Shown here: in pieces, positions 6,001-24,158 of the stretch
How positions within the stretch are numbered: position 1 is the first letter of the stretch
Layout of the letters: every line of letters begins with the position of its first letter
Assembly: GCA_002269645.1 (NCBI GenBank)
Contig: NIVC01003485.1
Coordinates: forward strand, 1-24,158
Reading direction: 5' to 3'
Origin: Macrostomum lignano
Taxonomy: Eukaryota
DNA length: 24,158 nucleotides
Position numbers and translations under genes: made by a program
The notes under the pieces: generated by a model
Databases searched by the model: none
Told to the model about the DNA's origin: nothing
Seen by the model: the letters and a program-made list of their open reading frames with translations, nothing else

Positions 6001-8890
6001 TCTGACACTTTCTCTTGACTCTTATCTGACACTTTCTCTTGACTCTTATCTGACACTCTCTCTTGACTCTTATCTGACACTCTCTCTTGACTCTTATCTG
6101 ACACTCTCTCTTGACTCTTATCTGACACTCTCTCTTGACTCTTATCTGACACTCTCTCTTGACTCTTATCTGACACTTCTCTTGACTCTTATCTGACACT
6201 CTCTCTTGACTCTTATCTGACACTTCTCTTGACTCTTATCTGACACTCTCTCTGACTCTTATCTGACACTTTCTCTTGACTCTTATCTGACACTTCTCTT
6301 GACTCTTATCTGACACTCTCTCTTGACTCTTATCTGACACTCTCTCTTGACTCTTATCTGACACTCTCTCTTGACTCTTATCTGACACTCTCTCTTGACT
6401 CTTATCTGACACTCTCTCTTGACTCTTATCTGACACTCTCTCTTGACTCTTATCTGACACTCTCTCTTGACTCTTATCTGACACTTCTCTTGACTCTTAT
6501 CTGACACTTTCTCTTGACTCTTATCTGACACTTTCTCTTGACTCTTATCTGACACTTTCTCTTGACTCTTATCTGACACTTTCTCTTGACTCTTATCTGA
6601 CACTTTCTCTTGACTCTTATCTGACACTTTCTCTTGACTCTTATCTGACACTTTCTCTTGACTCTTATCTGACACTTTCTCTTGACTCTTATCTGACACT
6701 TTCTCTTGACTCTTATCTGACACTTTCTCTTGACTCTTATCTGACACTTTCTCTTGACTCTTATCTGACACTTTCTCTTGACTCTTATCTGACACTTTCT
6801 CTTGACTCTTATCTGACACTCTCTCTTGACTCTTATCTGACACTTCTCTTGACTCTTATCTGACACTCTCTCTTGACTCTTATCTGACACTCTCTCTTGA
6901 CTCTTATCTGACACTCTCTCTTGACTCTTATCTGACACTTCTCTTGACTCTTATCTGACACTTTCTCTTGACTCTTATCTGACACTCTTCTCTTGACTCT
7001 TATCTGACACTCTCTCTTGACTCTTATCTGACACTCTCTCTTGACTCTTATCTGACACTCTCTCTTGACTCTTATCTGACACTCTCTCTGACTCTTATCT
7101 GACACTCTCTCTTGACTCTTATCTGACACTTCTCTTGACTCTTATCTGACACTTCTCCTTGACTCTTATCTGACACTCTCTCTTGACTCTTATCTGACAC
7201 TCTCTCTTGACTCTTATCTGACACTCTCTCTTGACTCTTATCTGACACTCTCTCTTGACTCTTATCTGACACTTTCTCTTGACTCTTATCTGACACTTTC
7301 TCTTGACTCTTATCTGACACTTTCTCTTGACTCTTATCTGACACTTTCTCTTGACTCTTATCTGACACTTTCTCTTGACTCTTATCTGACACTCTTCTCT
7401 TGACTCTTATCTGACACTTTCTCTTGACTCTTATCTGACACTCTTCTCTTGACTCTTATCTGACACTTTCTCTTGACTCTTATCTGACACTTTCTCTTGA
7501 CTCTTATCTGACACTTCTCTTGACTCTTATCTGACACTTTCTCTTGACTCTTATCTGACACTTCTCTTGACTCTTATCTGACACTTTCTCTTGACTCTTA
7601 TCTGACACTTTCTCTTGACTCTTATCTGACACTTTCTCTTGACTCTTATCTGACACTTTCTCTTGACTCTTATCTGACACTCTCTCTTGACTCTTATCTG
7701 ACACTCTCTTGACTCTTATCTGACACTTTCTCTTGACTCTTATCTGACACTTCTCTTGACTCTTATCTGACACTTTCTCTTGACTCTTATCTGACACTCT
7801 CTCTTGACTCTTATCTGACACTCTCTCTTGACTCTTATCTGACACTCTCTCTTGACTCTTATCTGACACTTCTCTTGACTCTTATCTGACACTCTCTTGA
7901 CTCTTATCTGACACTTTCTTTGACTCTTATCTGACACTTCTCTACTCTTATCTGACACTCTCTTGACTCTTATCTGACACTTTCTCTTGACTCTTATCTG
8001 ACACTCTCTTGACTCTTATCTGACACTCTCTTGACTCTTATCTGACACTTTCTCTTGACTCTTATCTGACTCTCTCCTTGACTCTTATCTGACACTTCTT
8101 TTGACTCTTATCTGACACTTTCTCCTTGACTCTTATCTGACACTCTCTCTTGACTCTTATCTGACACTCTCTCTTGACTCTTATCTGACTCTCTCTTGAC
8201 TCTTATCTGACACTTCTTTGACTCTTATCTGACACTTTCTCTTGACTCTTATCTGACACTTTCTATGACTCTTATCTGACACTCTCTTTGACTCTTATCT
8301 GACACTTTCTCTTGACTCTTATCTGACACTTTCTCTTGACTCTTATCTGACACTTCTCTTGACTCTTATCTGACACTTTCTCTTGACTCTTATCTGACAC
8401 TCTCTCTTGACTCTTATCTGACACTCTCTCTTTGACTCTTATCTGACACTTTCTCTTGACTCTTATCTGACACTTTCTCTTGACTCTTATCTGACACTCT
8501 CTCTTGACTCTTATCTGACACTTTCTCTTGACTCTTATCTGACACTTCTCTTGACTCTTATCTGACACTTTCTCTTGACTCTTATCTGACACTTTCTCCT
8601 GACTCTTATCTGACACTTTCTCTTGACTCTTATCTGACACTTTCTCTTGACTCTTATCTGACACTTTCTCTGACTCTTATCTGACACTTTCTCTGACTCT
8701 TATCTGACACTTCTCTTGACTCTTATCTGACACTCTCTCTCTGACTCTTATCTGACACTTCTCCTGACTCTTATCTGACACTTTCTCTGACTCTTATCTG
8801 ACACTTTCTCTTGACTCTTATCTGACACTCTTGACTCTTATCTGACACTCTCTTCTGACACACTTCTCTGACACTCTCTCCTGACTCTCT
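1..8890. repeat. 24-bp tandem satellite, unit ACT(C/T)TCTCTTGACTCTTATCTGAC, roughly 370 copies, open at the left edge
   Basis: The unit is read directly throughout. There are two main variants (ACTCTCTCTT and ACTTTCTCTT) plus frequent 1-2 nt indels in the CT tract. The array decays into CT-rich sequence at ~8820-8890. It produces the (VSDKSQEK)n and (CQIRVKRK)n pseudo-ORFs. Confidence 0.99.
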
Positions 8891-9312
8891 TCTCTGACAC
8901 TCTCCTCCATGTAACTATTTTCTCCCTTCTGACTCCTTATTCACAGACATTAACTTCATCATTTACTTCATTGAGTTTCACTTTCTCTCTCTCCATGTAC
9001 CCTCTAATCCATAGGTGCTATTTAATCCGAATCCCAACATTATTCGACCTTTCCATGGCAAGTCACAAAACCAGCCCAGTCTATCATAACGCAAGAGACG
9101 CCAGGCTTCAGATCAATGCTAGCAAGTAAGATATGGTCACCAAGGCGCTGCTGCAGAGATTCGACCAAAGGTAGCTCCTGTCTGTCTACCTTGCGAAGAC
9201 GAGAAAGGTCTGTCGGGCAAGTGCAGTGTAGACGAACAAGAAACTGACGGCTTATAAAAGTGCAGTCGGCGCTGCACTGATGCGGCTGTGCGTTCATTTT
9301 ACTTTATTTTAA

Positions 9313-9341
9313 AATTCACACTATACTGAATAGTGTGAATT
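9313..9341. other. Perfect 12-bp inverted repeat with 5-nt spacer
   Basis: AATTCACACTAT (9313-9324) - ACTGA - ATAGTGTGAATT (9330-9341). Confidence 0.9.
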
Positions 9342-9574
9342 GTGTGGTTTTTGTAGCAGACTTTTATTCATTTAATCAGCTGACTGAATACAGCAAATTG
9401 CGAGCGTAAAAGTTAAAATTAGTTTGAAATTCCTATTTTTTTTGTTTTACTCGCGTGAGGTATTCAGACAAAATCTCAGACCTGAGTGCATCCCCCAACC
9501 CTTTCTCTTCAAGTCATTTCTCAGTGCCTGGCCTCACTAGTTCTAACTGAGAACTGCATGGCAACCAATACTCT

Positions 9575-9755
9575 TACGAGTATGCACTCTCTATCAGTTT
9601 CTCTTCTCTCGATCTTTTCTATCTCTCTATTTCTTTCCTCCCCGCTCTCCCTCTCCTCACTCCCTCTCACCCCTCCTCCATCTCTCCCTCTCTCCCTCTC
9701 TCCCTCTCTCTCTGTCGCCCCACTCCCTCTCCCTATTTTCCTCTCCCCCTCTCGC
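9575..9755. repeat. CT-rich polypyrimidine low-complexity tract
   Basis: Almost exclusively C and T on the + strand. Source of the S/L/P-rich and E/R/G-rich spurious ORFs. Confidence 0.9.
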
Positions 9756-9805
9756 TTCCAGCCCAGAAGAAGAATTTGCCTAACTCGAAATATCGGAAAT
9801 GGTAT

Positions 9806-9938
9806 ATATTCCCCATTTATTTTGTTGTCTAGCGGCAAAAGCAAGAGGTGTCTCGTTTATTGACCGAGGCGAAGCCGAGGTCAATGATCGAGACACCGAG
9901 TGCTTTTGGCCCTAGACAGCTAAATGAGTGGGGAATAT
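9806..9938. other. 133-bp imperfect palindrome centred on a GGC-GAA-GCC mini-hairpin; possibly part of a non-autonomous DNA element
   Basis: Arms 9806-9870 and 9874-9938 pair without indels around the GAA loop (9871-9873). A manual count gives 52 Watson-Crick pairs, 4 G-T pairs and 9 mismatches over 65 positions. Origin from a mobile element is inference. Confidence 0.85.
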
Positions 9939-10140
9939 GATATGTATCCCCGTTCGTTGTCTATGGTTGTTGTCTCGAATTTATCAGCCGCGGGGCAGCG
10001 GGAAATAAATGATTTATTCACCTAGGGAAATAAATGAAAACATGCGTCACATAGACAGTCGCCCGGGGCAAAAGGGATACATACAACTAAATTGACTTTT
10101 GTCAGTCTTTTCTACCGTGTCAGGGCCTGAGCTTGGAGGT

Positions 10141-10400
10141 GCCCTCTCTCTCTCTCTCTCCTCTCTGTCTCTCTCTCTCTTTCTGTCTCCCTCTTTCACC
10201 CCTCACCCCCTTTCCCTCTCTCCCTCACTCCCTCTCTCCCTCTCTCTCTCTCTGTCTCCCTCTCCCTCTCCCCTTCTCCCTCTCCCCCTCACCCTATCCC
10301 CCTCTCCCCTCACCCTATCCTTCTCTCCCTCTTCCCCTCTCCCTCTCCCTCTCCCTCTCTCCCTCTCTTCCTCCTCCTCTCACCTTCTTTTCCCTCTCAC
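10141..10400. repeat. (CT)n/(CTCCCT)n polypyrimidine tract
   Basis: Seen directly; degenerate CT and CTCCCT units. Confidence 0.93.
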
Positions 10401-10794
10401 TGTCACAAATACATTCCCCCATTAACTATCCTATTCCATATTTCTTGTTTTCACAACTCGACTGATAGCAAAAAATAAACAAAAGGCAAAGCAAGCCAAA
10501 GGTTGAGCCAGAACAACTTGTCAATCAAATTAGCACAGCAGCACCTGATCTATGCGATGTATCTATCCATCTACCTGCCATCTGCCTACAAATCGAGGTG
10601 CAGAAGCTCGGGCAGCTCCAGATCGAAGCCCCTAGCTAACAGATATTGCGGCTGTAGCAGCAGGGGCATCTCGTTTAAAATAACAATGTATGCATAGATT
10701 CTGCTTTCCGTGTACGCTCGTATTTGCCTGTGTATTTTCAGCTAACTGCCCAGTAACTGCAATGATTGTGTCAGAGAAAATAACAGGGCGGGCA

Positions 10795-11175
10795 AGATAG
10801 AACAAGGGAGAAAGCACAGGACAGGACACAAGACAGAACAGGAGAAGGCAGGACAGGACGAACAGGACAGAATAGGACAGGATGGAACACACAGGACAGG
10901 ACAGGACAGGGAAGGACGGGACAGAACAGCACAAGACAGGACAGGACAGGACAGGACAGGACAGGACAGGACAGGACAGGACAGGACAGGACAGGACGGA
11001 CAGGACAGGACAGGACAGGGGACAGGACAGAACAGGACGGGTCACACATGTCAGGACAGGACAGGACAGGACAGGACAGGACAGGACAGGACAGGACAGA
11101 ACAGGACGGTTCACACATGTCAGGACAGGACAGGACAGGACAGGACAGGACAGGACAGGACAGGACAGGACAGGG
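10795..11175. repeat. (GACAG)n pentanucleotide microsatellite with two identical-type interruptions
   Basis: Long GGACA/GACAG runs, degenerate at the left end. Interruption AACAGGACGG(G/T)TCACACATGTCAGG at 11031 and 11100. Confidence 0.95.
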
Positions 11176-11934
11176 AGCAGAGGCGTGAGTGAAAGAGGAG
11201 CAGGAAAGACGGCAGCTGACAACTAAGGATTCACCGCAACTGCGGCTGACTCGCCTGAGCCAACAAGAGATTCAGTTTATGCTGTCCTATGTGTATTCGA
11301 AAAGTTCTGTGTTGCTACAAGTCTCCTTAAAAACTTGAAATTGGGATTGGATTCCCCCGAAGCCCCACAGGAGGGGCCATTTGCTAGAAAGTCCCTCAAG
11401 GTGTTCTTGCGACAAAATCTGCTTCTAGGGGAGCCAGGAAATTTAAAGGAGAGAGGAGTGGAGAGAGAAGAGAGAGAGGAGAGAGAGGAGGTATTAAAGA
11501 GGTGGAACAGCCAACCACAAGGCTTGAATAGTATCGAACATGGCGGCACTCCGAGCCCGTGGCATCTCCATCATTCGCTCCCAGCCTATCTTCTTGGTTC
11601 CTTTCTGCCCACCAGTTCTGCCTGTCTGTACAGTTCTGGGGGTTGAACCATTCGGCATCTGGGTTGGATCTGCATGCGAACGATTTAACCAAAGGATTGG
11701 TGGTGTATTGCTGACCAGTTTCCCTTGGCTAGCAACTGTATATCCTGGTATTTAGTGTATAGCTTGGAATACTGATCTGAATCAGCTACTTGTAGTTATT
11801 CGATATTGAAGTTATTCCAGGTACGACTTTAATTGCTAAATTTCTTGTAACGTTGTTAAAAAATAAGTAAGAAATAATTCCTAAAAACCTACTTCTTCTT
11901 TCTCAAACTCATTTTCTCTTTTTATCAACTTCCG

Positions 11935-12150
11935 AATCTGCCTTTCCTTCTGTACCCTCTCCCTCACCTACCCTACTCTCTCCCTCACCTACTCTACTCT
12001 CTCCCTCACCTACTCTACTCTATCCCTCATCTACTCTATTCTCTACCTCTCCTACTCTATTCTATCCCTCTCCCTCTCCCTCTCCCTTTTCCTCTCCCCC
12101 TTTCCTTCTTGCTCTCGCTCTCGCTCTTCTCTCCTCTCCCTTCCCTCTCA
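11935..12150. repeat. CT-rich tract including about 4 copies of a 21-bp unit CCCTCACCTACTCTACTCT(C/A)T
   Basis: Units start at 11961, 11982, 12003 and 12024, followed by CTCCCT-type sequence. Confidence 0.85.
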
Positions 12151-12949
12151 TATTAGATTTTTAACAACAGGAACTATTCTTACTTTTCCCTCAGAATTTT
12201 GCGCTCTTACTCCAGTCCAATTGTGAATCCATTTTTGTTGTAGATCGACTGACTTCAAATTGATTTAATTCCAAACCCAATATACGCTCGTAATAATGTA
12301 TAAAGAAAGGAAGTTTGGAATTTTTCAAGCATTATAATGATTCGAAGAATCAAAAGATAATTACTTAAGAGGAAGCTCTTGCAACTCAGAGTAGGCACTC
12401 AGGATTCGGTATGCATGCTACTAAAATGCATTGCCCTGGCTCTCTCATTCCTTTTTAATTTGCCGAAAGTGCGCATTAGAAACATTCCACTTAGATTCGA
12501 GTAGCTGCAGAATGGCCCACAGTCTGACTGAAGCTCTAAGTTTGTTCTCCTCAGTTTGGTCTAAGGCAAAATTCTTGCCAACATTCTATACAAGTTTCAG
12601 TTTCGTTTCTGAACTCGTCTCTCATTTAGAGCGAAAATTATTTCAGTGAAATACTGAAGTAATTAGACTCGCTATTATACATTCGTCAGGGAGATATCTT
12701 TCACCTGTGTCAGGTGCGTCGCAACGTGTCTCGGTCCCTAATGCTTGATCGAGCATGTGCGGTCTGACACCTTGCGAGCAAATGAGCAGGTGCAACTTTT
12801 ATTGAGCTAGCTAAATATGCCGAGTATACGAGCGTGTAATATAAAATCACTCGTGGACTGTGTAGCATGCGTCCAACTATACCATATTCAGTATCTCTAG
12901 ACTCTAGTAAAGTACGTTTCCCATAACGCTTCCAGAAAAATTCCCCGTC

Positions 12950-13258
12950 ATGCTTTCAGAACAAGCCGCAGAGACAGAAATGCTCCAACAGCACAAGCAA
13001 AAAGACGCAAAAAGTGCTGAAGGACTTGCAACGTCCAATCTGCGCAGAGGCGCCAGTCTATCACTGTCAAGCCTCGACGAAAGACTGTTTCTAGGCCTGG
13101 AGGATGACATGAGCTCGCTTGGAGACACATTCCAGCACAACCAAGCCTTCATCAGCGATGCTCAGTCAGCGTCTGACGCGGAAGAAGCATCTGACAGTCA
13201 GTTTCTGCAGAAGGTGGCCGACATCAATGCTCAAATGGCTGCTCAACTAGTGGCCTAG
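12950..13258 (+). CDS. Candidate coding exon or gene fragment, unknown product (acidic, low complexity)
   Basis: 102-aa ORF with protein-like composition (…SLSSLDERLFLGLEDDMSS…). No recognisable domain. It is not in frame with the next ORF, and the start is uncertain because exon boundaries are unknown. Confidence 0.4.
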   Translation: MLSEQAAETEMLQQHKQKDAKSAEGLATSNLRRGASLSLSSLDERLFLGLEDDMSSLGDTFQHNQAFISDAQSASDAEEASDSQFLQKVADINAQMAAQLVA

Positions 13259-13322
13259 CCCGCAAGGAGTCCATGGGATTAGGACGAGCGTATCAACAGG
13301 GCCCTCTGAAGCTACAAAATCA

Positions 13323-14780
13323 GTGAGTAAGATTTCCAATAAAAAACCGGAGCAGCCCAACGACATCTCTGCAACTGCTGTCAGCAGAACGCTAGCTTCC
13401 AAGAACTTTAAAAAGATCGATTCTACACAGCAATCATCGCAGAAACTTTACCAACAAGCTAAGACAAGACACCGACGACAGACAAAGCGTCGAACGTATC
13501 GACGACTGACGCTAGACCTTCTGACTTCAGACGAAGAGGCGAACGAGTTCGTCGAGGAGCGCAGCAGCCCCTACTTGGAGCCGTTGACGCGACGAAACCG
13601 TCAGGCCAAGGAGCCGGAGCGCAGGTCGTCTTTCGAGACCCTATACGGCGACGAGTTTTGGTCGGCAGTCTCGGTAGAAAAAACCAGTCAGTGCGAGTGC
13701 AGTTGCCATGACAACGAATCAGGTCAGGCACTTTGCGAACAGCAGAATTCAAGCTCCCCTATTGGCTGCAAACAACCAGACAAGAAAAGTACTTGCAGCA
13801 CAGAGCCTGCTGGGGCGGAAAACTCCAGTGAACAGAATAATGCTGCAGCAGTGGCTATGAATGAAAGCTCAGCTAGCAGTCACCCAGTGGAACGACCCAG
13901 ACCAGCAGAATTGGTAGCCAAAAAAATGGCTGGCAGCCAAGCAGCAAATAACTCGGCCACTTCCACTTCCACTGGAGCGGCATCGAGCTATCGAACGAAT
14001 CCTAGGCGTGTTGTTTCTATGCGACGGCAGGACCAGGAGCAGCACAAGCTTCCGGAGCGTCATTCAGCCGGTGTCAGGTTTTCTGTACCCACAGCCATGG
14101 AGCCTTGCCAGAAGAAAGATTCTCTGGACCATCAACACAATGGCCATCAGACGTCGCCACCGCCGCTGCCGCCGAGAATGCGTCGAGCCGCCGTCCGCTT
14201 CAGAGCCGGCAGTTTCTCGCAGGGTCTGACTGACCTGCAGCTGCAACAGCAGCAGCTGAATCAATCGTCGAGGCTTGAGATTGGCGTCTTACTGCGCGGC
14301 CCGCCGTCCAGTTTGAGTCGTCAGTCGTCCGAAGAGCTCGTGGTGACGAATCTTCGCCGAGTAGATAGTCGAGACCCGGTGTCGCAGCTGGAGTTCATGT
14401 GCCGCGCTATGCGACTCGACGACGCCGATCTCATGGAGGGGGCGGCCAGGCGGGACCGCCTGGGACCGATGCCACCGCAACAGCAACAGCAGCATCAGCC
14501 GATTCGAAGGTGGAGCACCAGCAGCTATAAGCAATACTGGCGACAGACTCAGAGACCGGACCGGATCCGAGACGATCAGGCCAGACGACGCCTGGTCTGC
14601 GGGCCGGCGACTGCAGCTGAACAGCAGCAGCAGCGCCAGCAGCAGCGGCAACTGCCAAACTTTATGGGCCGGGCGTCCGACGGCGACAGAGCGCGTCTTC
14701 AAGGTTGGTGGCGGGTGTCAAGGAAACGGTCGAGCATGCGGCCTCCAATCGGTCAGCCGTCCGAGAAAGCGACCAGTTAA
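13323..14780 (+). CDS. Large coding-like exon, 485 aa, Ser/Arg/Gln-rich and probably intrinsically disordered, unknown product
   Basis: The longest non-repeat ORF in the window; the frame is open from 13251. It has CAG/CAA polyQ runs and several RRxS-type motifs (RRSS, RRWS). No recognised domain. The GTG start in the track is unlikely to be the true start. Confidence 0.6.
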   Translation: MSKISNKKPEQPNDISATAVSRTLASKNFKKIDSTQQSSQKLYQQAKTRHRRQTKRRTYRRLTLDLLTSDEEANEFVEERSSPYLEPLTRRNRQAKEPERRSSFETLYGDEFWSAVSVEKTSQCECSCHDNESGQALCEQQNSSSPIGCKQPDKKSTCSTEPAGAENSSEQNNAAAVAMNESSASSHPVERPRPAELVAKKMAGSQAANNSATSTSTGAASSYRTNPRRVVSMRRQDQEQHKLPERHSAGVRFSVPTAMEPCQKKDSLDHQHNGHQTSPPPLPPRMRRAAVRFRAGSFSQGLTDLQLQQQQLNQSSRLEIGVLLRGPPSSLSRQSSEELVVTNLRRVDSRDPVSQLEFMCRAMRLDDADLMEGAARRDRLGPMPPQQQQQHQPIRRWSTSSYKQYWRQTQRPDRIRDDQARRRLVCGPATAAEQQQQRQQQRQLPNFMGRASDGDRARLQGWWRVSRKRSSMRPPIGQPSEKATS

Positions 14781-15990
14781 AGATGATCTTCATTTCTTAC
14801 TATAGTTATCGTTCACAGTTGATCTTTCTGTCTTGCCTTTGTCCGCAGTTATTAGATGTCTTCATAGTTTATCATCTGCAAGCTATATTGCACTATTTTA
14901 CGAGTAATTCAAGCGTTCATCAAAAATAATTTCAGCTGTCAGCGGTACTACCTGTCAAAGGTATGAACTCAATCTCTAAGAAAGAAAACTCCTTGCTTGT
15001 ATTTCTTTCTGCAGTTATCGGTCTTCCTTCACTCCTAACTATACATTATGTGGTGGTTTGGTTCTTTGTTTGACTTGCTGCCTTGACTTTTGGTTTGTTG
15101 CGTACAACATGGAGGCACTACTAATATAGAAATTTAACATCCAATGCATGATAGCTTCACACCCAACAGCATGGAAACGAGAATGCCATTTGCGGTACTT
15201 TTTAGCATTTCAGCCACCGTTAGCAGCCGACTCAGCGGAGCAGTTTTGAAACAGAAAACCGTTGACGGGACTGTTGCTATTTGATTTTAAGACTACTGGC
15301 TTGCTTTTAAACTTTAAAGGAAGGAACTTCAAGTTTAATACTTTGAAACGGTTTATAGGTCCACTAAAACAACAGTCCTTCTGTTTGCGCTTGAGATCAA
15401 TAACCCCACTCCCCTGAGACCACAAACTAAATTTTACACAGCTTACCTACACTAAAGTCACAATACTTGCACGTTGCCGGAGAAATGCGTTTGTTTTAAA
15501 CAAAAAATAAACTCTGTTAGTGGGAATGCTGTTAAAAACCGTATAACCGCATGGTGCTTGAGTTTTGCGTGAATGATGTCTACTCACAATACTCTACTCA
15601 AAGTATGAACGTTTAATTTGATTTACTTTTTCATTTTGATGCCTGCATAGGGCCAACTATTTTAAATATTTCGATTTTTATTGAGACATTTGTAGACGAA
15701 AGTCATTCCAAACTAGGAAAAAGAAATATGTGACTTTGGGATAAGAAAAAAAGGCAACCATGGTTAGCATTTGGGAATATTGGAAATAAGGATCGATAAC
15801 AAGACGTATTAAGTCTTTTGATTGAAATACTCAAGTATCTGCTCAAGAAAAAAACTAAGAGTTTAGTTTGTACTTCTTCTAATTTGCATCATACGTGATC
15901 AGGAAGTCACAAAAGTGAGTTAATCGATTTTTCTATGCCGAAATTTCCTTCACTGTTTTTAGTAAACTTTAGTCGTTTTTTTCTAAACAG

Positions 15991-16639
15991 TCCAGAATTT
16001 CTCGTGTTACCACTTTATCTAAAAATAGAACAACGTTCAGCTTCACAGATTTTGAAGCCGTCTAATCTTAAACCGACTCAACAGGTCGCAACGACCTATC
16101 AGTACCAGTCAACCAAGCTGATTTTGTCCAACCTGGCTGATCAAGAAGACAACGAGGCCGAGTCAAAAAATGATAAATACTTGTCCAGTGCAAGCAAGAC
16201 TACTCGTCGAGGTCGTCAACTCCAACAATACCGTCGCACTCGATGGCGCTGGCTGCCAACAGGATCGATTTCTGCGGACGTCCCCGACGTCCTTGAAGAC
16301 GACGACTCAGCGTCGACTTCCGAGGCTGACGATGGAAGCGCGGAGTCTTGCACGGACAAGAATGGCTGGTCCAGCTGCAGCGAAAGCTCCTCCTCGCAAG
16401 GTAGCGTATGCTCAGATGTGCTTAAAATAATGCACGAAATACTGTTTTCTGATAAATTGCCAGTTGTTAATTGGGCTTTGAGCTCTGCCAGGATTCAAAG
16501 TAGCACTCAACCCGGAGTCAGTGAGAAGGCAAGCAGTCCTTCCCATGTCACTGCCCCTGAGCAAACATGCGTACACAGACAAGTGCGCAGGCACACACTC
16601 ACACAGCGTGTACAGCAGCAAAGACTTTCTCATCGATAG
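15991..16639 (+). CDS. Candidate exon, acidic and Ser-rich, unknown product
   Basis: Part of the 234-aa ORF 15935-16639. A pyrimidine tract plus AG (GTTTTTTTCTAAACAG, ending 15990) is a plausible splice acceptor. The frame continues past TAG with further stops. Confidence 0.4.
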
Positions 16640-16911
16640 GCTGTTGTACTATCTCTTTCTCTGCGTGTACATAAGGAGTAGGCAGTCATCATGGAAATGA
16701 ATCGCACGACAAACCCAAAGCCATTTTCTGTGCAGGAGCTACCAAGACGGTCGACCGTTTTCCGCTAAGCTACTCAACCCCTAATAGAAGAGTGGAAAAT
16801 GAGACTATTTGTTTCTTAATGTCGATCATGGCCTAACGTTGCCATAAGTTGCGTCATTTCCTATTGCTTCCCCCCCGAAAAACTAAAATTGTATAATCGA
16901 TAAAACAATGT

Positions 16912-17421
16912 TTGATTACATTCAAGCACAAATTTGAACACGATGCCATTCGCAGATGCGCCGCAGCCGTTTCGCTTTCCATAGTCAGCCGTCACAACAG
17001 GTCAGAAAGCACTGGAAACGAGCTGAGCCGTGACGAAGTCCCATCGTCGATGTCTTCCCTACTGCGCAAAGCCGCCTCAATGACTGACGTGGATCGAAGT
17101 TGCGTCAGGCGCCACAGCAGCCACTTGGCAATGGTGCTCGCGCCGCCTGCAACTCGACGACACTTGCAACAACAACAACAGCAGCAGCAACCAAAACCAC
17201 CACAACAACAGAAACAACAGCCTGCTCGATTTTGGAAGACTTTAGAAGTTCGATATGGTTCCGAGTCGGAGCTCAGCAAACTGCCACAAGCCGCTGCTTC
17301 GTCTGCGCAGGCTACAAGCGCTGTTGGGACGCCCGCTCGTTGCAAGAGCTCCTATTTTGTGCATATCAGACCCAGCTGCAATTGGAGAAGCCAGCCCACT
17401 TTGCTAGAAGAAGCCGAGTAA
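16912..17421 (+). CDS. Candidate exon with polyQ tract, unknown product
   Basis: 169-aa ORF similar in style to 13323-14780 (RKAAS, RRHSS, QQQQQQQQPKPPQQQ). No domain recognised. Confidence 0.45.
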   Translation: MITFKHKFEHDAIRRCAAAVSLSIVSRHNRSESTGNELSRDEVPSSMSSLLRKAASMTDVDRSCVRRHSSHLAMVLAPPATRRHLQQQQQQQQPKPPQQQKQQPARFWKTLEVRYGSESELSKLPQAAASSAQATSAVGTPARCKSSYFVHIRPSCNWRSQPTLLEEAE

Positions 17422-17428
17422 CTGACGA

Positions 17429-17502
17429 ACTGACTGACTGACTGACTGACTGACTGACTGACTGACTGACTGACTGACTGACTGACTGACTGACTGACTG
17501 AC
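17429..17502. repeat. (ACTG)n tetranucleotide microsatellite, about 18 units
   Basis: Perfect ACTG run seen directly. Confidence 0.98.
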
Positions 17503-17800
17503 ACTCGTTCACTAACTAAACTCTAAAGTTTTAAAGTTTCACATTCGCTGTCGCAAATTTTCGCAAATCCACAATTCAATAAAACGCACTTGAAATTATT
17601 CCATTCAATAATCGCGATACTTTGGAGTGAGTGTTTTTAACCGCATATGGCAGTGCGTTTAGCAATATTTTTGTTACGATTTACGAGAAGGTACATCATC
17701 ATGCCTTCGAGGAATATGCTTGTAAAATTCTAAGAGCCGAAGCTGGTCCATGGAAAATAATTGGCCTGGAGAATTGGTTGTCAACGTGAAGACAAAAAGT

Positions 17801-17875
17801 GACGGGGCGTAGCCTAGTCGTCTAGCGCGGCTCTCTTGTGTCCCAGCGACCCAGGCTCGATTCCAAGTGCAGTCA
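17801..17875 (+). pseudogene. Degenerate tRNA-like sequence (tRNA pseudogene or tRNA-derived SINE head)
   Basis: 75 nt long. A-box-like TAGCCTAGTCG (17810-17820) and B-box-like GGCTCGATTCC (17854-17864) lie at tRNA spacing. Ends GAC…GTC+A partly pair. The anticodon loop is TTGTGTC-like (His-GTG-like but ambiguous). Stems are damaged and there is no T-run terminator. Confidence 0.5.
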
Positions 17876-17880
17876 CATTA

Positions 17881-18103
17881 ATGAGCAAAAGCCCGAATCC
17901 AGCGATGGGGTCACAGGCCCCCGTGATTCCGATATCGCCAATGAGACCAAGAGCCGCTGTTATGACTGCAAGTACCAGTCGGTTCAGGCTTCCTGGGCTT
18001 TAAATCCTCCGTCTCGATCTAGCAGTAGATTCTATAGACGAGTTTGACGCATGACAAGCGACCATCGAGGCCTATTTGGAGGCAATGGGCGTCCACAATC
18101 AAC
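17881..18103 (+). mobile_element. Probable N-terminal gag fragment of a Ty3/gypsy element, with two in-frame stops
   Basis: My translation from ATG 17881: MSKSPNPAMGSQAPVIPISPMRPRAAVMTASTSRFRLPGL*ILRLDLAVDSIDEFDA*QATIEAYLEAMGVHNQ. The LDL..D...F.AW…Y….G pattern resembles gag N-termini of invertebrate gypsy elements as I recall them; not verified by search. Confidence 0.4.
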
Positions 18104-19204
18104 CAGGAACTTTTTGTTGGCGTGTTCGCAGAAATCTGCTTATATGCGCTGAAAACAATGTTCTGGTGGATTTAATGTGCTCATGGGCTCCTTAACTTGG
18201 GATGGGAGGTGTTCCTGGAACGACTTACATTGTCTTATAGCGCTCTCAATGTCTCGATCGAGGCCTGGCCAGTGCAAGGCCTCTGTTTTGTCTTGGTAAG
18301 CCCTCGGTGTGTAAGAACCTGCTTTCACATGGCTCATGGAACGCTGCATCAACTTCAGCAGCAGAGGATGATCCCGTCTTCGACGGTAATCTCTTCACGC
18401 ACAATCCAGAATGGGCGCACATTGTTGGGCATATTGGTCTTGTCGTTCGGAAATCCGTCTGTATTGTGCTGCTTTAGGTCCTGCAGATCCTGAACAACAG
18501 TCGTGCTTTCTTGCACTCAACACAAGCTAGGGTCCAGTTTTGCATTTGGTAGCATCAAGGGTCGGTTGGATCGGGAGTGATTCTCAGGGGTCGGTTGGAT
18601 CGGGAGTGATTCTTAAGGGTCGGGTGGATCAGGAGTGATTTTCTTGGTAGCATGAGTTGGTGTGACAGGTGAAAGTCTGCTGATTCTGCTAGCTCGTCCT
18701 GTTGAGTCGGGTAGTCTACAGGTGCATTATCCTTGCCTTTAACCCATCTTGCATGGCGTTCCAGTTTAGCTCTCAAGCGCTGGATTCTGGGGATCTCGAT
18801 CAGGTCCAGCTGGTAGCTGTTCAGAATCGAACTAGGGGCTTGTGGTCAGTAACGATGTCGAACTCAGACAGACCTTCTAGGAAAAGCCTACACTTCTGTG
18901 TCGCCCAGACCACGGCCAACAATTCTAGCTTAATCATTGCGGATCTAAATTCGGTACCAGTAGAGATGAACCTGGATCCCGCCTTGTCGTAGGCAAGGGT
19001 AGACGTGTTTGCGAGGTGGCTGCGGGCCTTTTCAAAAGCATCTTGCCGTTCTTGTCCCACTGAAACATATTCTTTTTTTGATAGCAGCGGTCCTAGCGGG
19101 CCTGTTACCTCCACAACTTCTGGAGTAAATTTTCCAACTTGGTTAACAAGACCAAAGAATGCTCGAAGATTCGTTATATTTTTAGGTTTTAAAAATTCTG
19201 TGAG
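18100..19204 (-). mobile_element. Decayed Ty3/gypsy pol fragment: RT connection, RNase H, linker, integrase zinc-finger and start of integrase core
   Basis: Read across frameshifts on the - strand: FLKPKNITNLRAFFGLVNQ; GSRFIS…LELLAVVWATQKCRLFLEGLSEFDIVTDHKPLV; ILNSYQLDLIEIPRIQRLRAKL…WVKGKDN; DLQDLKQHNTDGFPNDK…VRPFWIVREEITVEDGIIL; WPGLDRDIESAIRQCKSFQEHLPSQVKEP; CFQRI*ADFCEHANKKFLV. The RNase H N-terminal TDAS segment is deleted, and there are several stops and frameshifts. Confidence 0.93.
18546..18653. repeat. Three 29-bp minisatellite units (18556-18643) flanked by a 10-bp direct repeat TTGGTAGCAT, inserted in gypsy pol
   Basis: TTGGTAGCAT at 18546-18555 and 18644-18653. The insert is CAAGGGTCGGTTGGATCGGGAGTGATTCT plus two variant units plus 1 nt. 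Confidence 0.92.
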
Positions 19205-19230
19205 TGAAAATTTAGGAAATAGCAAAAATC

Positions 19231-19274
19231 AATGGTCCGTGAATCCCCATTGAATGGTCCGTGAATGGCCATTG
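19231..19274. repeat. 22-bp tandem duplication near the boundary of the pol fragment
   Basis: AATGGTCCGTGAATCCCCATTG followed by AATGGTCCGTGAATGGCCATTG. Confidence 0.85.
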
Positions 19275-19559
19275 ATCTTTGATGAGAAGCTGGAAATCAT
19301 CTTTGTTTGAAAATTTGTCTATGGCCCGTCCTAAATAATTCGACTTTCTTGCGATTGAGTTCTTTCTTTCATGCATGATCACTTCTACAAATGTAAATAT
19401 AAACTTAGCACTGGACCTTGGCTTTTTAAAATTGCTGGCATATTTTAACACCATCATGCGCAGTGTCTATGAAATAAACCAAGCGGTATCGCCCCCAATC
19501 TTGAGCCCGTCGAAAAAGGATTACTTTATCCATGGCCTGGGTCAAATTTCTAGTCCAAA

Positions 19560-20093
19560 ATGTCATTTCTAGCCGAAAACTATGAATATTACGTGTATTC
19601 TCAGTTTCTTAACTGCGCCAACAATAATCAGTGCGACGAATCAAGAGACAAGGACAGCGTCGACGAAAATGTCAGCAATCAACCTGCTGCATCTCATACA
19701 GCTGTCGATAAACTGGTGGAGCATCAAGAACTTGAACGAAGGTCGACTCTGTTAAATCAACTAGCGGAAGAGCAGGTGCACCATGATCAGAAGTCCGAGG
19801 ACAAGAGGTACACCGATGTCTACGAAAACAGCATCGATGTGCAGAAAGTGTTTAATGACGACCCGTCACTGCATCAGGATATCATCAACTATCTAGGAAG
19901 CCGGCCGATGAAGGAGAAAATTATCATGTCTAAATCTCGATTGGTGCCTCCCTGGGAGGTGCAGTTTTTTACTATTCTGTCTTTCTGGTTAATTAACTGC
20001 GGAATTTGCTGCATTGTGTGCGCCATTGTTGGCGTGACAACCACACGTAAGTGTAACGGCTTAGTCGCTTTGATTGGCAGAGATTTTTGCTGA
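19560..20093 (+). CDS. Candidate exon(s): charged N-terminal part followed by a hydrophobic, transmembrane-like segment
   Basis: 177-aa ORF ending in FFTILSFWLINCGICCIVCAIVGVTT. There is a possible acceptor (TATTCTCAG, ~19603) and a GTAAGT donor at ~20047. No family recognised. Confidence 0.35.
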   Translation: MSFLAENYEYYVYSQFLNCANNNQCDESRDKDSVDENVSNQPAASHTAVDKLVEHQELERRSTLLNQLAEEQVHHDQKSEDKRYTDVYENSIDVQKVFNDDPSLHQDIINYLGSRPMKEKIIMSKSRLVPPWEVQFFTILSFWLINCGICCIVCAIVGVTTTRKCNGLVALIGRDFC

Positions 20094-20118
20094 GCTACTC
20101 GTAACGATGATAACCGGG

Positions 20119-20811
20119 CCACTCCGAATCGTCACTTTACCCCTCGGAATGGTCACTCTACCACTCAGAATGGTCACTCTACCACTCAGAATAGTCACTT
20201 TACCCCCTCGGAATGGTCACTCTACCACTCAGAATGGTCACTTTACCCCCTCAGAATGGTCACTCTACCACTCAGAATGGTCACTCTACCACTCAGAATG
20301 GTCACTCTACCACTCAGAATGGTCACTTTACCCACTCAGAATGGTCACTCTACCACTCAGAATGGTCACTTTACCCCCTCGGAATGGTCACTCTACCACT
20401 CAGAATGGTCACTCTACCACTCAGAATGGTCACTCTACCACTCAGAATGGTCACTCTACCACTCAGAATGGTCACTTTACCCCCTCAGAATGGTCACTCT
20501 ACCACTCAGAATGGTCACTCTACACTCAGAATGGTCACTCTACCACTCAGAATGGTCACTTTACCCACTCAGAATGGTCACTCTACCACTCAGAATGGTC
20601 ACTTTACCCCCTCGGAATGGTCACTCTACCACTCAGAATGGTCACTCTACCACTCAGAATGGTCACTTTACCCCCTCGGAATGGTCACTCTACCACTCAG
20701 AATGGTCACTTTACCACTCAGAATGGTCACTCTACCACTCAGAATGGTCACTTTATCACTCAGAATGGTCACTTTACCACTCAGAATTATCACTTCACCA
20801 CACAGAATGGT
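20119..20811. repeat. Minisatellite of 21-bp (GGTCACTCTACCACTCAGAAT) and 22-bp (GGTCACTTTACCCCCTCGGAAT) units, about 33 copies
   Basis: Units read directly, with degenerate copies at both ends. Produces the MVTLPLR, QNGHSTT and SEWSLYH pseudo-ORFs. Confidence 0.97.
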
Positions 20812-21234
20812 AAAGTACTCACTTTACGAGTTCCTGAGGGTCCCCTTACTTCCTCTTCCTCTTCCTATTGTGCTCACATCACAATATATTAGATTTCTGA
20901 ACTTGAACGCCTCAAACTTGGCTGCAGGGTTCGAGTTCACAAAGGAACTGAAGCTCGGTGAAAATAGCAGCACAAAGATGTCGTTGGCTGTCATCTGTTC
21001 ATCGGGTTCGTCCTAATTGTGCTCAACTTCATCATTACCAGCTCCTTTCTGCTCATCTACAGCTGCTCATCGAAAAAGGATGAACAAGAGAAATTTGATT
21101 AAAGAGGCTTGTACTCTGTTTTTAGATTAGTTCATTGATTCATTCTGGCTGTTTGTTGTGCAAGTTCAAAATAAAAAGTCTGTCTATTTTCGCGTCATTG
21201 TCGCTCCCATTGTTTCTACTGGAACGGAAAACCT

Positions 21235-21330
21235 AAACGTAAACTGAGAGGCATCGGTTGAGCCGTTTTTGCTCAACCGATCACATATCCACATATGTAC
21301 CTACCGACAGACCATTTTTAGTATATAGGA
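21235..21330 (-). mobile_element. Probable 5' end of a non-autonomous Helitron-like element, containing a perfect 11-bp hairpin
   Basis: The - strand reads A|TCCTATATACTAAAAATGGTCTGTCGG…GCAAAAACGGCTCAACCGAT. It has a 5'-TC start after an A and resembles Lep1-type Helitron 5' ends as I recall them. Hairpin: ATCGGTTGAGC (21253-21263)/GCTCAACCGAT (21271-21281). No CTRR 3' end found. Confidence 0.45.
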
Positions 21331-21377
21331 TTGTAAATGGTTCACCGAGGGTATCAGAAGGAGTGCAATGGAAACGG

Positions 21378-21681
21378 GGATCGGGAGTGATTCTTTGGGG
21401 TCGGTTGGATTGGGAGTGATTCTCAGAGGCTGGTTGGATCGGGAGTGATTCTCAAAGGCTCGTTGGATCGGGAGTGATTCTCAGAGGCTGGTTGGATCGG
21501 GAGTGATTCTCAAAGGCTCGTTGGATCGGGAGTGATTCTCAAGGGTCGGTTGGATCGGGAGTGATTCTCAGAGGCTGTTTAGATCGGGAGTGATTCTCAA
21601 GGGTTGGTAAATCTGAAATTATTCTTAGGAATTGGTAGATTAGGTGTGATTCTCAGCGGCAGGCCTATGAGAGGTGATTAT
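21378..21681. repeat. 29-bp minisatellite GGTTGGATCGGGAGTGATTCTCA(G/A)AGGCT, about 7 intact units plus degenerate units
   Basis: One partial unit, about 7 good units and about 3 progressively degenerate units to the right. Same family as the insert at 18556-18643. Confidence 0.95.
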
Positions 21682-21978
21682 CATTGAGGATAATGAAGAA
21701 CGATGGGTATGGTGGGGTGGACGCAAATTGATTTTCTTGGGAATTCTAAAATCAGTTGAATTTAGCTGAGGCATTGCATGGCTTCGTAGTGACGTTGAAA
21801 ATATATTTTGAGCAGTTCAGCAAAGAATAAACGCAGAAAAACAGTTTAAGTTGATGCGTTCTAAATTCAGAATTTAACAATCAAAAAAACAATGGAAGCT
21901 TTGGCTTAGCATATTTGAGATGCATTTCAATAAAAATACATTGAATGAACGTTGTTGGCTCCTATCCATAATTCTTGC

Positions 21979-24158
21979 AGTCATTCCTGCACGGCTTTCG
22001 CTTTCGACCATAGATGTACATGTAGTAATTCCTGCACGGTTTTCTCTTTCAACCATAGATGTACATGTAGTCATTCCTGCAAGGCTTTATCCTTCAACCA
22101 TAGATGTACATGTAGTCATTCCTACACGGCTTTCGCTTTTGACCATAGATGTACATGTAGTCATTCCTACACGGCTTTCGCTTTTGACCATAGATGTACA
22201 TGTAGTCATTCCTGCACGGCTCTCGCTTTTGACCATAGATGTACATGTAGTCATTCCTGCACGGCTCTCGCTTTTGACCATAGATGTACATGTAGTCATT
22301 CCTGCACGGCTCTCGCTTTTGACCATAGATGTACATGTAGTCATTCCTGCACGGCTCTCGCTTTTGACCATAGATGTACATGTAGTCATTCCTGCACGGC
22401 TCTCACTTTTGACCATAGATGTACATGTAGTCATTCCTGCACGGCTCTCGCTTTTGACATAGATGTACATGTAGTCATTCCTGCACGGCTTTCTCTTTCG
22501 ACCATAGATGTACATGTAGTCATTCCTGCACGGCTTTCTCTTTCGACCATAGATGTACATGTAGTAATTCCTGCACGGCTCTCGCTTTTGACCATAGATG
22601 TACATGTAGTCATTCCTGCACGGCTCTCGCTTTTGACCATAGATGTACATGTAGTCATTCCTGCACGGCTCTCGTTTTGACCATAGATGTACATGTAGTC
22701 ATTCCTGCACGGCTCTTCGCTTTTGACCATAGATGTACATGTAGTCATTCCTGCACGGCTCTCACTTTCGACCATAGATGTACATGTAGTCATTCCTGCA
22801 CGGCTCTCGCTTTTGACCATAGATGTACATGTAGTCATTCCTGCACGGCTCTCACTTTTGACCATAGATGTACATGTAGTCATTCCTGCACGGCTTTTCT
22901 CTTTCGACCATAGATGTACATGTAGTCATTCCTGCACGGCTTTCTCTTTCGACCATAGATGTACATGTAGTCATTCCTGCACGGCTTTCTCTTTCGACCA
23001 TAGATGTACATGTAGTCATTCCTGCACGGCTTTCTCTTTCGACCATAGATGTACATGTAGTCATTCCTGCCGGCTTTCTCTTTCGACCATAGATGTACAT
23101 GTAGTCATTCCTGCACGGCTCTCACTTTTGACCATAGATGTACATGTAGTCATTCCTGCACGGCTCTCGCTTTTTGACCATAGATGTACATGTAGTCATT
23201 CCTGCACGGCTTCTCACTTTTGACCATAGATGTACATGTAGTCATTCCTGCACGGCTCTCGCTTTTGACCATAGATGTACATGTAGTCATTCCTGCACGG
23301 CTTTCTCTTTCGACCATAGATGTACATGTAGTCATTCCTGCACGGCTTTCTCTTTCGACCATAGATGTACATGTAGTCATTCCTGCACGGCTTTCTCTTT
23401 CGACCATAGATGTACATGTAGTCATTCCTGCACGGCTTTCTCTTTCGACCATAGATGTACATGTAGTCATTCCTGCAGCGCTCTCACTTTTGACCAATAG
23501 ATGTACATGTAGTCATTCCTGCACGCGCTCTCACTTTTGACCATTAGATGTACATGTAGTCATTCTGCACGGCTCTCGCTTTTGACCATAAAATGTACAT
23601 GTAGTCATTCCTGCACGGCTCTCGCTCGCTTTTGACCATAGATGTACATGTAGTCATTCCTGCACGGCTCTCGCTTTTGACCATAATGTACATTAGTCAT
23701 TCCTGCACGGCTCTCGCTTTTGACCATAGATGTTACATGTAGTCATTCCTGCACGGCTTTCTCTTTCGACCATAGATGTACATGTAGTCATTCCTGCACG
23801 GCTCTCGCTTTTGACCATAGATGTACATGTAGTCATTCCTGCACGGCTCTCGCTTTTGACCATAGATGTACATGTAGTCATTCCTGCACGGCTCTCGCTT
23901 TTGACCATAGATGTACATGTAGTCATTCCTGCACGGCTTTCTCTTTCGACCATAGATGTACATGTAGTATTCCTGCACGGCTCTCGCTTTTGACCATAGA
24001 TGTACATGTAGTATTCCTGCACGGCTTTCTCTTGTCGACCATAGATGTACATGTAGTCATTTCCTGCACGGCTCTCACTTTTGACCATAGATGTACATGT
24101 AGTCATTTCCTGCACGGCTCTCGCTTTTGACCATAGATGTACATGTAGTCATTCCTGC
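21979..24158. repeat. 45-bp tandem satellite, unit ACCATAGATGTACATGTAGTCATTCCTGCACGGCTCTCGCTTTTG, about 48 copies, open at the right edge
   Basis: Unit read directly; the 15-aa periodicity of the ORFs confirms 45 bp. Variant ends are CTCTCGCTTTTG, CTTTCTCTTTCG and CTCTCACTTTTG. The most divergent units lie at the left edge. Confidence 0.99.

What the first reader, a model, noticed from the sequence alone, without database searches (positions are those of the whole stretch)
18546..18653. A minisatellite that appears to have moved: 3 x 29-bp units inserted into gypsy pol with a 10-bp target-site-like duplication
Seen: an 88-nt insert (18556-18643) sits between two exact copies of TTGGTAGCAT. 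Deleting the insert and one copy (98 nt) rejoins the - strand pol frame cleanly (…DELAESADFHLSHQL-MLP-NAKLDPSLC*VQESTTVVQDLQDLKQ…), so the repeat arrived after the retroelement. Its first unit is 29/29 identical to 21540-21568 in the larger array 2.8 kb away, in the same orientation. The three units are not a contiguous copy of that array, so the donor may lie elsewhere. Established: flanking duplications of this size arise from staggered cuts (non-LTR/Penelope-type target-primed reverse transcription, some transposases) or from templated break repair; Helitrons do not make them. Inference: this minisatellite family is dispersed as short TSD-flanked cassettes, possibly via an RNA intermediate. 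There is no poly(A) tail and no terminal inverted repeat.
Basis: partly seen in the sequence, partly recalled or inferred. Interest (0 to 1): 0.7.

Follow-up and report, generated by a model that had tools for sequence, protein, structure and literature searches.

The report
Minisatellite copy inserted in dead retroelement
Three 29-bp minisatellite units, flanked by an exact 10-bp duplication of the target, were inserted into a decayed gypsy retrotransposon of the flatworm Macrostomum lignano, most likely as a single local copying event of a kind already described for satellite DNA, not as evidence of a mobile cassette family.

Summary
TTGGTAGCAT occurs exactly twice in the window, at 18546-55 and 18644-53, bracketing 88 nt made of three 29-bp units plus 1 nt. 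Removing 98 nt restores the minus-strand frame. The joined sequence aligns without gaps to a gypsy homologue across the junction, so the repeat entered an existing retroelement relic.

New facts:
- The window is a whole contig of Macrostomum lignano.
- A second copy of the locus in the same assembly, 1.0-1.5% diverged, has the same insertion and the same decamers but four units. This is therefore one old event that later changed length by slippage.
- The only other 29-mer locus found is the array 2.8 kb away, in the same orientation. It has no flanking duplication.
- The sister contig's array holds a contiguous triplet that is 91% identical to the insert, with unit variants in the same order.

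No other copies of the 29-mer or of this gypsy family could be reached, so "a family of TSD-flanked cassettes via RNA" remains untested.

I favour a local DNA-level templated insertion, either a template switch or a filled staggered break (about 0.5). Target-primed reverse transcription is the main rival (about 0.2). Short satellite insertions flanked by 2-10 bp duplications are already described in humans. Interest is low to moderate.

The parts
18546..18555 (+). Left copy of the duplicated target decamer TTGGTAGCAT. On the minus strand it encodes M-L-P plus the first base of N in the pol relic.
18556..18643 (+). 88-nt insert of three 29-nt minisatellite units plus 1 nt: CAAGGGTCGG..., CAGGGGTCGG..., TAAGGGTCGGGTGGATCAGG...TTTT, then C. 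The sister contig L007 has four units (117 nt) at the same site.
18644..18653 (+). Right copy of the decamer. Its first four bases, TTGG, are also what follows GATTCT or GATTTTC at 21388-21398 and 21730-21740 beside the neighbouring array, so 4 nt of this junction could come from either donor or target.
17700..19450 (-). Decayed Ty3/gypsy pol relic covering RNase H, a linker and the integrase zinc finger and core, with several frameshifts and stops. The insertion lies in the RNase H-integrase linker. Limits are approximate.
21378..21608 (+). Neighbouring 29-bp minisatellite: 8 units with higher-order periods of 58 and 87, in the same orientation, 2.7-2.8 kb from the insert. Degenerate units continue to about 21760. 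It has no flanking duplication. L007 has 13 units here. This is the likely donor or a relative of the donor.

Best explanation
This is a single, old, DNA-level copying event.

Proposed steps:
1. A break or a stalled replication fork arose in an already dead gypsy pol relic.
2. It was repaired by copying three or four units from the 29-bp minisatellite that lies 2.8 kb away on the same strand.
3. The 10-bp duplication arose in one of two ways. Either the copying strand returned to the original template 10 nt behind the point where it left, guided by the 4-nt TTGG microhomology (a FoSTeS/MMBIR- or SDSA-type template switch). Or the break had 10-nt staggered ends that were both filled in before the copied block was joined.
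4. The small array then behaved as an ordinary minisatellite and gained or lost one unit by slippage.

Shown here: the insertion came after the element; the target duplication is exact; a single event is shared by two diverged copies of the locus; the unit number changed in place; a donor-like array lies in cis.

Inferred: the DNA-level route, the template switch, and the identity of the donor.
For: - Post-element insertion: the joined flanks keep the frame. They align without gaps over 84 residues to homologue P0005 across the junction, with RT_RNaseH and Integrase_H2C2 matches on either side.
- The only other locus of the 29-mer in the window (no unit with 7 or fewer mismatches elsewhere in 9001-22000), in L007 and in the other loci fetched is the array 2.8 kb away, in the same orientation. 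Such closeness is expected for a local template switch. It is improbable for a random retroposition unless the family is extremely abundant.
- Insert units match that array unit for unit, with 0-1 mismatches for most units. The sister contig's array contains a contiguous triplet with 8 mismatches in 88 and the same order of variants.
- Arrays at this locus turn over quickly. All four arrays compared differ in copy number between contigs that are only 1.0-1.5% diverged. The present unit order in the array therefore does not exclude it as donor.
- The junctions are clean, with 1 nt and 4 nt of possible microhomology. TTGG follows GATTCT or GATTTTC in the array region.
- The literature proposes MMEJ, FoSTeS/MMBIR and SDSA with template switching for satellite insertions at new sites (PMC7403614). 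It also reports 2-10 bp duplications at most euchromatic alpha-satellite insertions (PMC7719264).
Against: - An exact 10-bp duplication with no deletion or filler is the classical mark of an enzyme-made staggered cut. In the human survey of templated insertions, those with duplications of 5 bp or more were the LINE-1-mediated class, whereas break-repair patches lacked them (PMC5110952).
- Microhomology at the left junction is only 1 nt.
- No contiguous exact donor segment exists today.
- The genome-wide abundance of the 29-mer is unknown, so the proximity argument cannot be quantified.
- The target site is not significantly similar to the repeat, so homology did not obviously guide the event.
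Confidence: 0.5

Rival explanations
1. Target-primed reverse transcription. A transcript containing the 29-mer array was reverse transcribed at a nick made by a non-LTR or Penelope-type endonuclease, giving a severely 5'-truncated copy. The second nick, 10 nt away, produced the duplication. The nicked bottom strand ending in ...CCAA-3' could have primed on UUGG in the RNA.
For: - The exact 10-bp duplication and clean junctions lie in the usual TPRT range.
- In humans, templated insertions with duplications of 5 bp or more are the LINE-1-mediated class (PMC5110952).
- TTGG at the right junction allows 4-nt priming.
- A plus-strand gene call ends 360 nt upstream of the large array, at 19560-21016, so plus-strand transcripts of the array are conceivable.
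Against: - There is no poly(A) or simple-repeat tail.
- The target is not a T-rich/A-rich endonuclease site.
- No element body, tRNA-like SINE head or Rfam family was found next to either array.
- Only one event is known.
- The large array has no flanking duplication.
- A source-like array only 2.8 kb away in the same orientation is not expected for retroposition.
Confidence: 0.2
2. Reintegration of an extrachromosomal circle or free fragment excised from the minisatellite. Either it recombined at a motif shared by satellite and target, as in the model proposed for human alpha-satellite insertions, or it was captured by end joining at a staggered break.
For: - Short duplications of 2-10 bp flank most euchromatic alpha-satellite insertions and were explained in this way (PMC7719264).
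- Satellite circles are documented in beetles and flies (PMC11610590; PMC7403614).
- The insert consists of repeat units only.
Against: - A crossover at a shared motif would place satellite sequence directly after the shared bases at the left junction. Instead, all ten target bases precede CAAGGG.
- Only TTGG, 4 of the 10 bases, is shared with the repeat.
- The target is no more similar to the repeat than control windows are: score 17 against 14 +/- 2.3, with 73 of 757 controls at least as high.
- Fragment capture by end joining usually causes a small deletion rather than a 10-bp duplication (PMC5110952).
Confidence: 0.12
3. A cut-and-paste DNA transposon or MITE whose body is the 29-mer array, for example a Mutator-like element with a 9-11 bp duplication, or a Helitron/Helentron carrying tandem repeats.
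For: - The 10-bp duplication fits the size usual for Mutator-like elements (own knowledge).
- Tandem-repeat-bearing MITEs and Helentrons are known in molluscs and flies (PMC3879986, PMC7492417, listed).
- A perfect 11-bp hairpin lies about 100 nt upstream of the large array.
Against: - The insert has no terminal inverted repeats: CAAGGGTCGG... against ...AGTGATTTTC.
- All units are in one orientation.
- Helitrons make no target duplication.
- The insert contains nothing except repeat units.
- The large array has no flanking duplication or inverted termini.
Confidence: 0.06
4. Not an insertion: the repeat and both decamers are original parts of this gypsy family, or the flanking match arose by chance.
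For: No member of the same gypsy family could be obtained to show an empty site at the DNA level.
Against: - The insert breaks the frame, and removing exactly 98 nt restores it.
- The joined sequence is colinear with homologue P0005, without gaps, across the junction.
- The units are identical to those of a non-gypsy array nearby.
- A flanking 10-mer is far beyond chance.
Confidence: 0.03

Closest known systems
Short satellite arrays inserted at unique euchromatic sites with 2-10 bp flanking duplications (human alpha-satellite repeats, Feliciello et al. 2020, PMC7719264; related work on Tribolium TCAST/Cast, PMC5844308 and PMC11610590)
   Same: A few tandem-repeat monomers sit at a new site, often inside another repeat. 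The junctions are abrupt and a short duplication lies at the insertion site. There is no poly(A), and each insertion is unique and does not spread further.
   Different: Here the unit is a 29-bp minisatellite rather than a major satellite. The donor-like array is only 2.8 kb away. The duplicated decamer shares only 4 bases with the repeat, so the homology-guided circle integration proposed there does not explain it.
Microhomology-mediated or template-switch insertion of satellites (Rsp-like into 1.688 in Drosophila simulans and D. mauritiana, Sproul et al. 2020, PMC7403614)
   Same: Truncated monomers are joined to the target at short microhomologies. In some of those clusters target sequence is duplicated at the second junction. 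MMEJ, FoSTeS/MMBIR and SDSA with template switching are the proposed mechanisms.
   Different: Those insertions go into another satellite and then spread by homology. This one lies in a unique retroelement relic and is known from one event only.
LINE-mediated templated insertions and 5'-truncated non-LTR/SINE copies (class 1 templated sequence insertion polymorphisms, PMC5110952)
   Same: The target-site duplication is at least 5 bp, the junctions are clean and the insert is short.
   Different: There is no poly(A), no polyadenylation signal and no T-rich nick site. No element body is present and multiple copies have not been shown.
Tandem-repeat-carrying non-autonomous elements (pearl/DTC84 MITEs, Helentron-derived elements; PMC3879986, PMC7492417)
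   Same: Short arrays of up to about six satellite-like units are dispersed outside long arrays.
   Different: Those arrays are central modules between conserved element arms. This insert has no arms and no inverted termini, and it has a 10-bp duplication that Helitron-type elements do not make.

Membership tests
TPRT insertion (non-LTR, SINE or Penelope-type) | Flanking target-site duplication of variable length, about 5-20 bp | tested here: met
   Exact 10-bp duplication
TPRT insertion (non-LTR, SINE or Penelope-type) | Defined 3' tail (poly(A) or a short simple repeat) abutting the duplication | tested here: not met
   The insert ends ...GGAGTGATTTTC on the plus strand and ...CCGACCCTTG on the minus strand, with no tail
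TPRT insertion (non-LTR, SINE or Penelope-type) | Many copies sharing a 3' end, with variable 5' truncation and different duplications | not testable with these tools
   The M. lignano genome cannot be searched by DNA here. Only two loci of the 29-mer were seen, and L007 carries the same event
TPRT insertion (non-LTR, SINE or Penelope-type) | Source element with an RT gene or an internal-promoter (tRNA/5S/7SL-like) head next to the repeats | tested here: not met
   No tRNA-like sequence and no Rfam family in 9000-22100. No ORF of 60 aa or more lies next to the large array
Cut-and-paste DNA transposon or MITE | Terminal inverted repeats abutting the duplication | tested here: not met
   The termini CAAGGGTCGG and AGTGATTTTC are not inverted copies of each other
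Helitron/Helentron | No target duplication; 3' hairpin and CTRR-type end inside the element | tested here: not met
   A 10-bp duplication is present. The insert has no significant hairpin (z = -0.09)
Satellite insertion with short junction duplication (alpha-satellite type, PMC7719264) | Short array of monomers at a unique site, flanked by a 2-10 bp duplication | tested here: met
   Three or four units and a 10-bp duplication.
Satellite insertion with short junction duplication (alpha-satellite type, PMC7719264) | The duplicated motif is homologous to a motif in the satellite (recombination site) | tested here: not met
   Only TTGG is shared. Target-to-repeat similarity is not above controls, and the layout of the left junction contradicts a crossover
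Template-switch (FoSTeS/MMBIR/SDSA) templated insertion | Donor sequence nearby in cis | tested here: met
   Array at 21378-21608, 2.7-2.8 kb away, same orientation
Template-switch (FoSTeS/MMBIR/SDSA) templated insertion | Insert colinear with a contiguous donor segment | tested here: inconclusive
   The best contiguous match has 13 mismatches in 88 in the window array and 8 in 88 in the L007 array, with the same variant order. Arrays turn over fast
Template-switch (FoSTeS/MMBIR/SDSA) templated insertion | Microhomology at both switch points | tested here: inconclusive
   1 nt on the left and up to 4 nt (TTGG) on the right
Ty3/gypsy pol (the host sequence) | RT-linked RNase H followed by an integrase zinc-binding domain on one strand | tested here: met
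   RT_RNaseH scores 42 bits against a cut-off of 24.8. Integrase_H2C2 is below its cut-off at 16.8 bits. The 18 homologues are 26-41% identical, all carry RT_RNaseH and five also carry Integrase_H2C2

The most novel reading that the evidence does not exclude
The 29-bp minisatellite is itself a mobile unit in Macrostomum lignano. Short blocks of it would be inserted at many unrelated sites, with 10-bp-class target duplications and no poly(A). That would mean either a retroelement endonuclease/RT acting on repeat transcripts or an unknown enzyme that recognises the repeat.
Probability: 0.15. Interest if true: 0.6.

Novelty: new member of a known kind. Interest (0 to 1): 0.3.

Why it matters
How tandem repeats seed new arrays away from their home array is still debated. 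The candidates are circles, template switching, transposon hitch-hiking and retroposition.

This case is a clean, datable example:
- The empty site can be inferred from a coding frame.
- The duplication is exact.
- A candidate donor lies in cis.
- Two diverged copies of the locus show that the new array immediately started to vary in length.

On its own it is one anecdote in a repeat-rich flatworm genome. It would matter more if a genome-wide survey showed many such insertions.

Tried and rejected
1. I scanned JGI metagenome contigs for a 19-mer of the unit. This gave six single chance hits in bacterial contigs and no arrays.
2. I searched the protein database with translations of the array on both strands, hoping to reach other arrays through called ORFs. 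Nothing was found. Canonical units carry a stop in every frame.
3. I looked for members of the same gypsy family. The best hit was 41% identical, so no DNA-level empty site was available. L009, fetched from one hit, is an unrelated element from an environmental assembly.
4. I tested whether the target resembles the repeat, because TTGGTAG also occurs in a degenerate unit at 21632. The similarity is not significant.
5. I scanned window 9001-22000, on both strands, for solo or degenerate units with up to 7 mismatches. None were found. An exact 15-nt core of the unit was absent from L009 and L010.
6. I looked for tRNA or Rfam families (a SINE head or ribozyme) near the arrays. None were found.
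7. I tested for a DNA hairpin in the insert. There is none.
8. I looked for flanking duplications or inverted termini around the large array and the other arrays. None longer than 6 nt were found.
9. I searched the literature for described satellites of M. lignano. Nothing relevant turned up in the titles and abstracts listed.

Full report
**What is there.** The plus strand reads ...GTTTTGCAT[TTGGTAGCAT]CAAGGGTCGG...GGAGTGATTTTC[TTGGTAGCAT]GAGTTGG....
- The decamer is exact at 18546-55 and 18644-53 and occurs nowhere else in the window. The bases just outside the two copies differ, so the duplication is exactly 10 nt.
- The 88 nt between them are three 29-nt units plus one base.
- Unit 1 is identical to 21540-68 in the larger array at 21378-21608. 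Unit 2 differs from it by one base and unit 3 by four.
- Among ten tandem arrays in the window, this is the only one with a flanking direct repeat longer than 6 nt. A shared 10-mer in the flanks of random 88-nt intervals occurred in 0.1% of trials, even without requiring that it abut the interval.

**It is an insertion into an older element.** The minus strand around the site is a decayed Ty3/gypsy pol. RT_RNaseH lies upstream and a weak Integrase_H2C2 match lies downstream. The 18 homologues are 26-41% identical and have that architecture.
- Removing the insert and one decamer (98 nt) puts both flanks in one frame.
- The joined peptide aligns without any gap to homologue P0005 over 84 residues, from PT..DELAE through the junction (MLP|N) to PFW...ITVEDG.
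- The element therefore originally had one decamer and no repeat. No member of the same family could be found, so this empty-site evidence is at the protein level only.

**Where it comes from.** The ORF at 13323-14780 is 100% identical to a Macrostomum lignano protein. The window is the whole 24158-bp contig NIVC01003485.1 of assembly GCA_002269645.1.

**A second copy of the locus.** Contig NIVC01001279.1 of the same assembly (L007) is colinear with the window and differs by 1.0-1.5% substitutions outside the arrays.
- It has the same insertion at the same site with the same two decamers, but four units, 117 nt.
- The insertion is therefore one event, older than the split of these two copies. 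Whether they are alleles or paralogues I cannot tell.
- The new array has since gained or lost a unit.
- All four arrays compared at the locus differ in copy number between the contigs: ACTG 20 against 114, the 21-mer 33 against 19, and the large 29-mer 8 against 13.

**The donor.** The only other 29-mer locus anywhere I could look is the array 2.7-2.8 kb away, in the same orientation.
- It has no flanking duplication, and its right edge decays into degenerate units.
- The insert is not an exact contiguous copy of it. However, the sister contig's array has a contiguous triplet with 8 mismatches in 88 and the same CAA/CAG/TAA order of unit heads.
- Given the turnover seen at these arrays, the neighbouring array is a reasonable donor.

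**Junctions.** On the left, all ten target bases are followed directly by CAAGGG, so at most 1 nt of microhomology is possible. On the right, GATTTTC is followed by TTGG. TTGG also follows GATTCT or GATTTTC at two places beside the array, so up to 4 nt are ambiguous. TAGCAT can only be target sequence. The apparent similarity of the target to a degenerate unit (TTGGTAG) is not above chance. The insert has no hairpin, no inverted termini and no poly(A).

**Mechanism.** I favour a local DNA-level templated insertion at about 0.5. It would arise from a template switch that returned 10 nt behind its point of departure, or from a filled 10-nt staggered break. The main reason is that a donor-like array in cis and in the same orientation is expected under this model. 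It is improbable for retroposition unless the family is very abundant.
- The main rival is target-primed reverse transcription, at about 0.2. It is favoured by the clean, exact duplication. In humans, templated insertions with duplications of 5 bp or more are the LINE-1-mediated class (PMC5110952).
- Circle integration at a shared motif, proposed for alpha-satellite insertions with 2-10 bp duplications (PMC7719264), does not fit the left junction.
- TIR transposons and Helitrons fail their defining features.

**Comparison and novelty.** Short satellite arrays inserted at new sites with short flanking duplications or microhomology are already documented in humans, beetles and flies. This is a new example in a flatworm, with an unusually clean empty-site inference and a candidate donor in cis. 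I found one event, not several.

**Limits.** No tool here can search the M. lignano genome by DNA, so neither the abundance of the 29-mer nor other copies of the gypsy family could be assessed. I did not reconstruct the retroelement. I joined only the two flanks of the insertion and searched a 330-residue conceptual fragment.

Noticed in passing
window 1-8901 and 21979-24158: The contig begins in a 24-bp satellite (375 copies, 95% matches) and ends in a 45-bp satellite (48 copies). In L007 the 45-mer array is 2.1 kb long and is followed by unique sequence, so the window probably ends because the assembly broke inside the satellites.
   Followed up: partly
window 17421-17502; L007 14452-14911: An (ACTG)n microsatellite next to the integrase end of the gypsy relic has 20.5 copies in the window and 114.5 in the sister contig.
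   Followed up: partly
window 20119-20811 (gene call 19560-21016, plus strand): A 21-bp minisatellite lies inside an annotated coding gene (products of 191 aa here and 268 aa in L007). It is open in all three frames and has 33 against 19 copies in the two contigs, making it a coding minisatellite of unknown function.
   Followed up: no
window 21253-21281: A perfect 11-bp inverted repeat with a 7-nt loop (ATCGGTTGAGC / GCTCAACCGAT) lies about 100 nt upstream of the large 29-mer array and is conserved in L007. Its meaning is unknown.
   Followed up: no
window 19231-19275: A 22-bp tandem duplication (AATGGTCCGTGAATCCCCATTG, two copies) lies just past the upstream end of the part of the gypsy pol relic that matches homologues.
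   Followed up: no
window 18556-18643 and 21378-21608: Each 29-mer unit has four G-runs on the plus strand (GGG TC GG TT GG ATC GGG), a two-tetrad G-quadruplex-type motif that could stall replication. This was read by eye only and not tested.
   Followed up: no
window 13323-14780: A glutamine-rich ORF of 485 aa is 100% identical to part of the hypothetical protein BOX15_Mlig020338g1 (600 aa). It has no Pfam domain on record and its only other relative is one distant M. lignano paralogue.
   Followed up: partly
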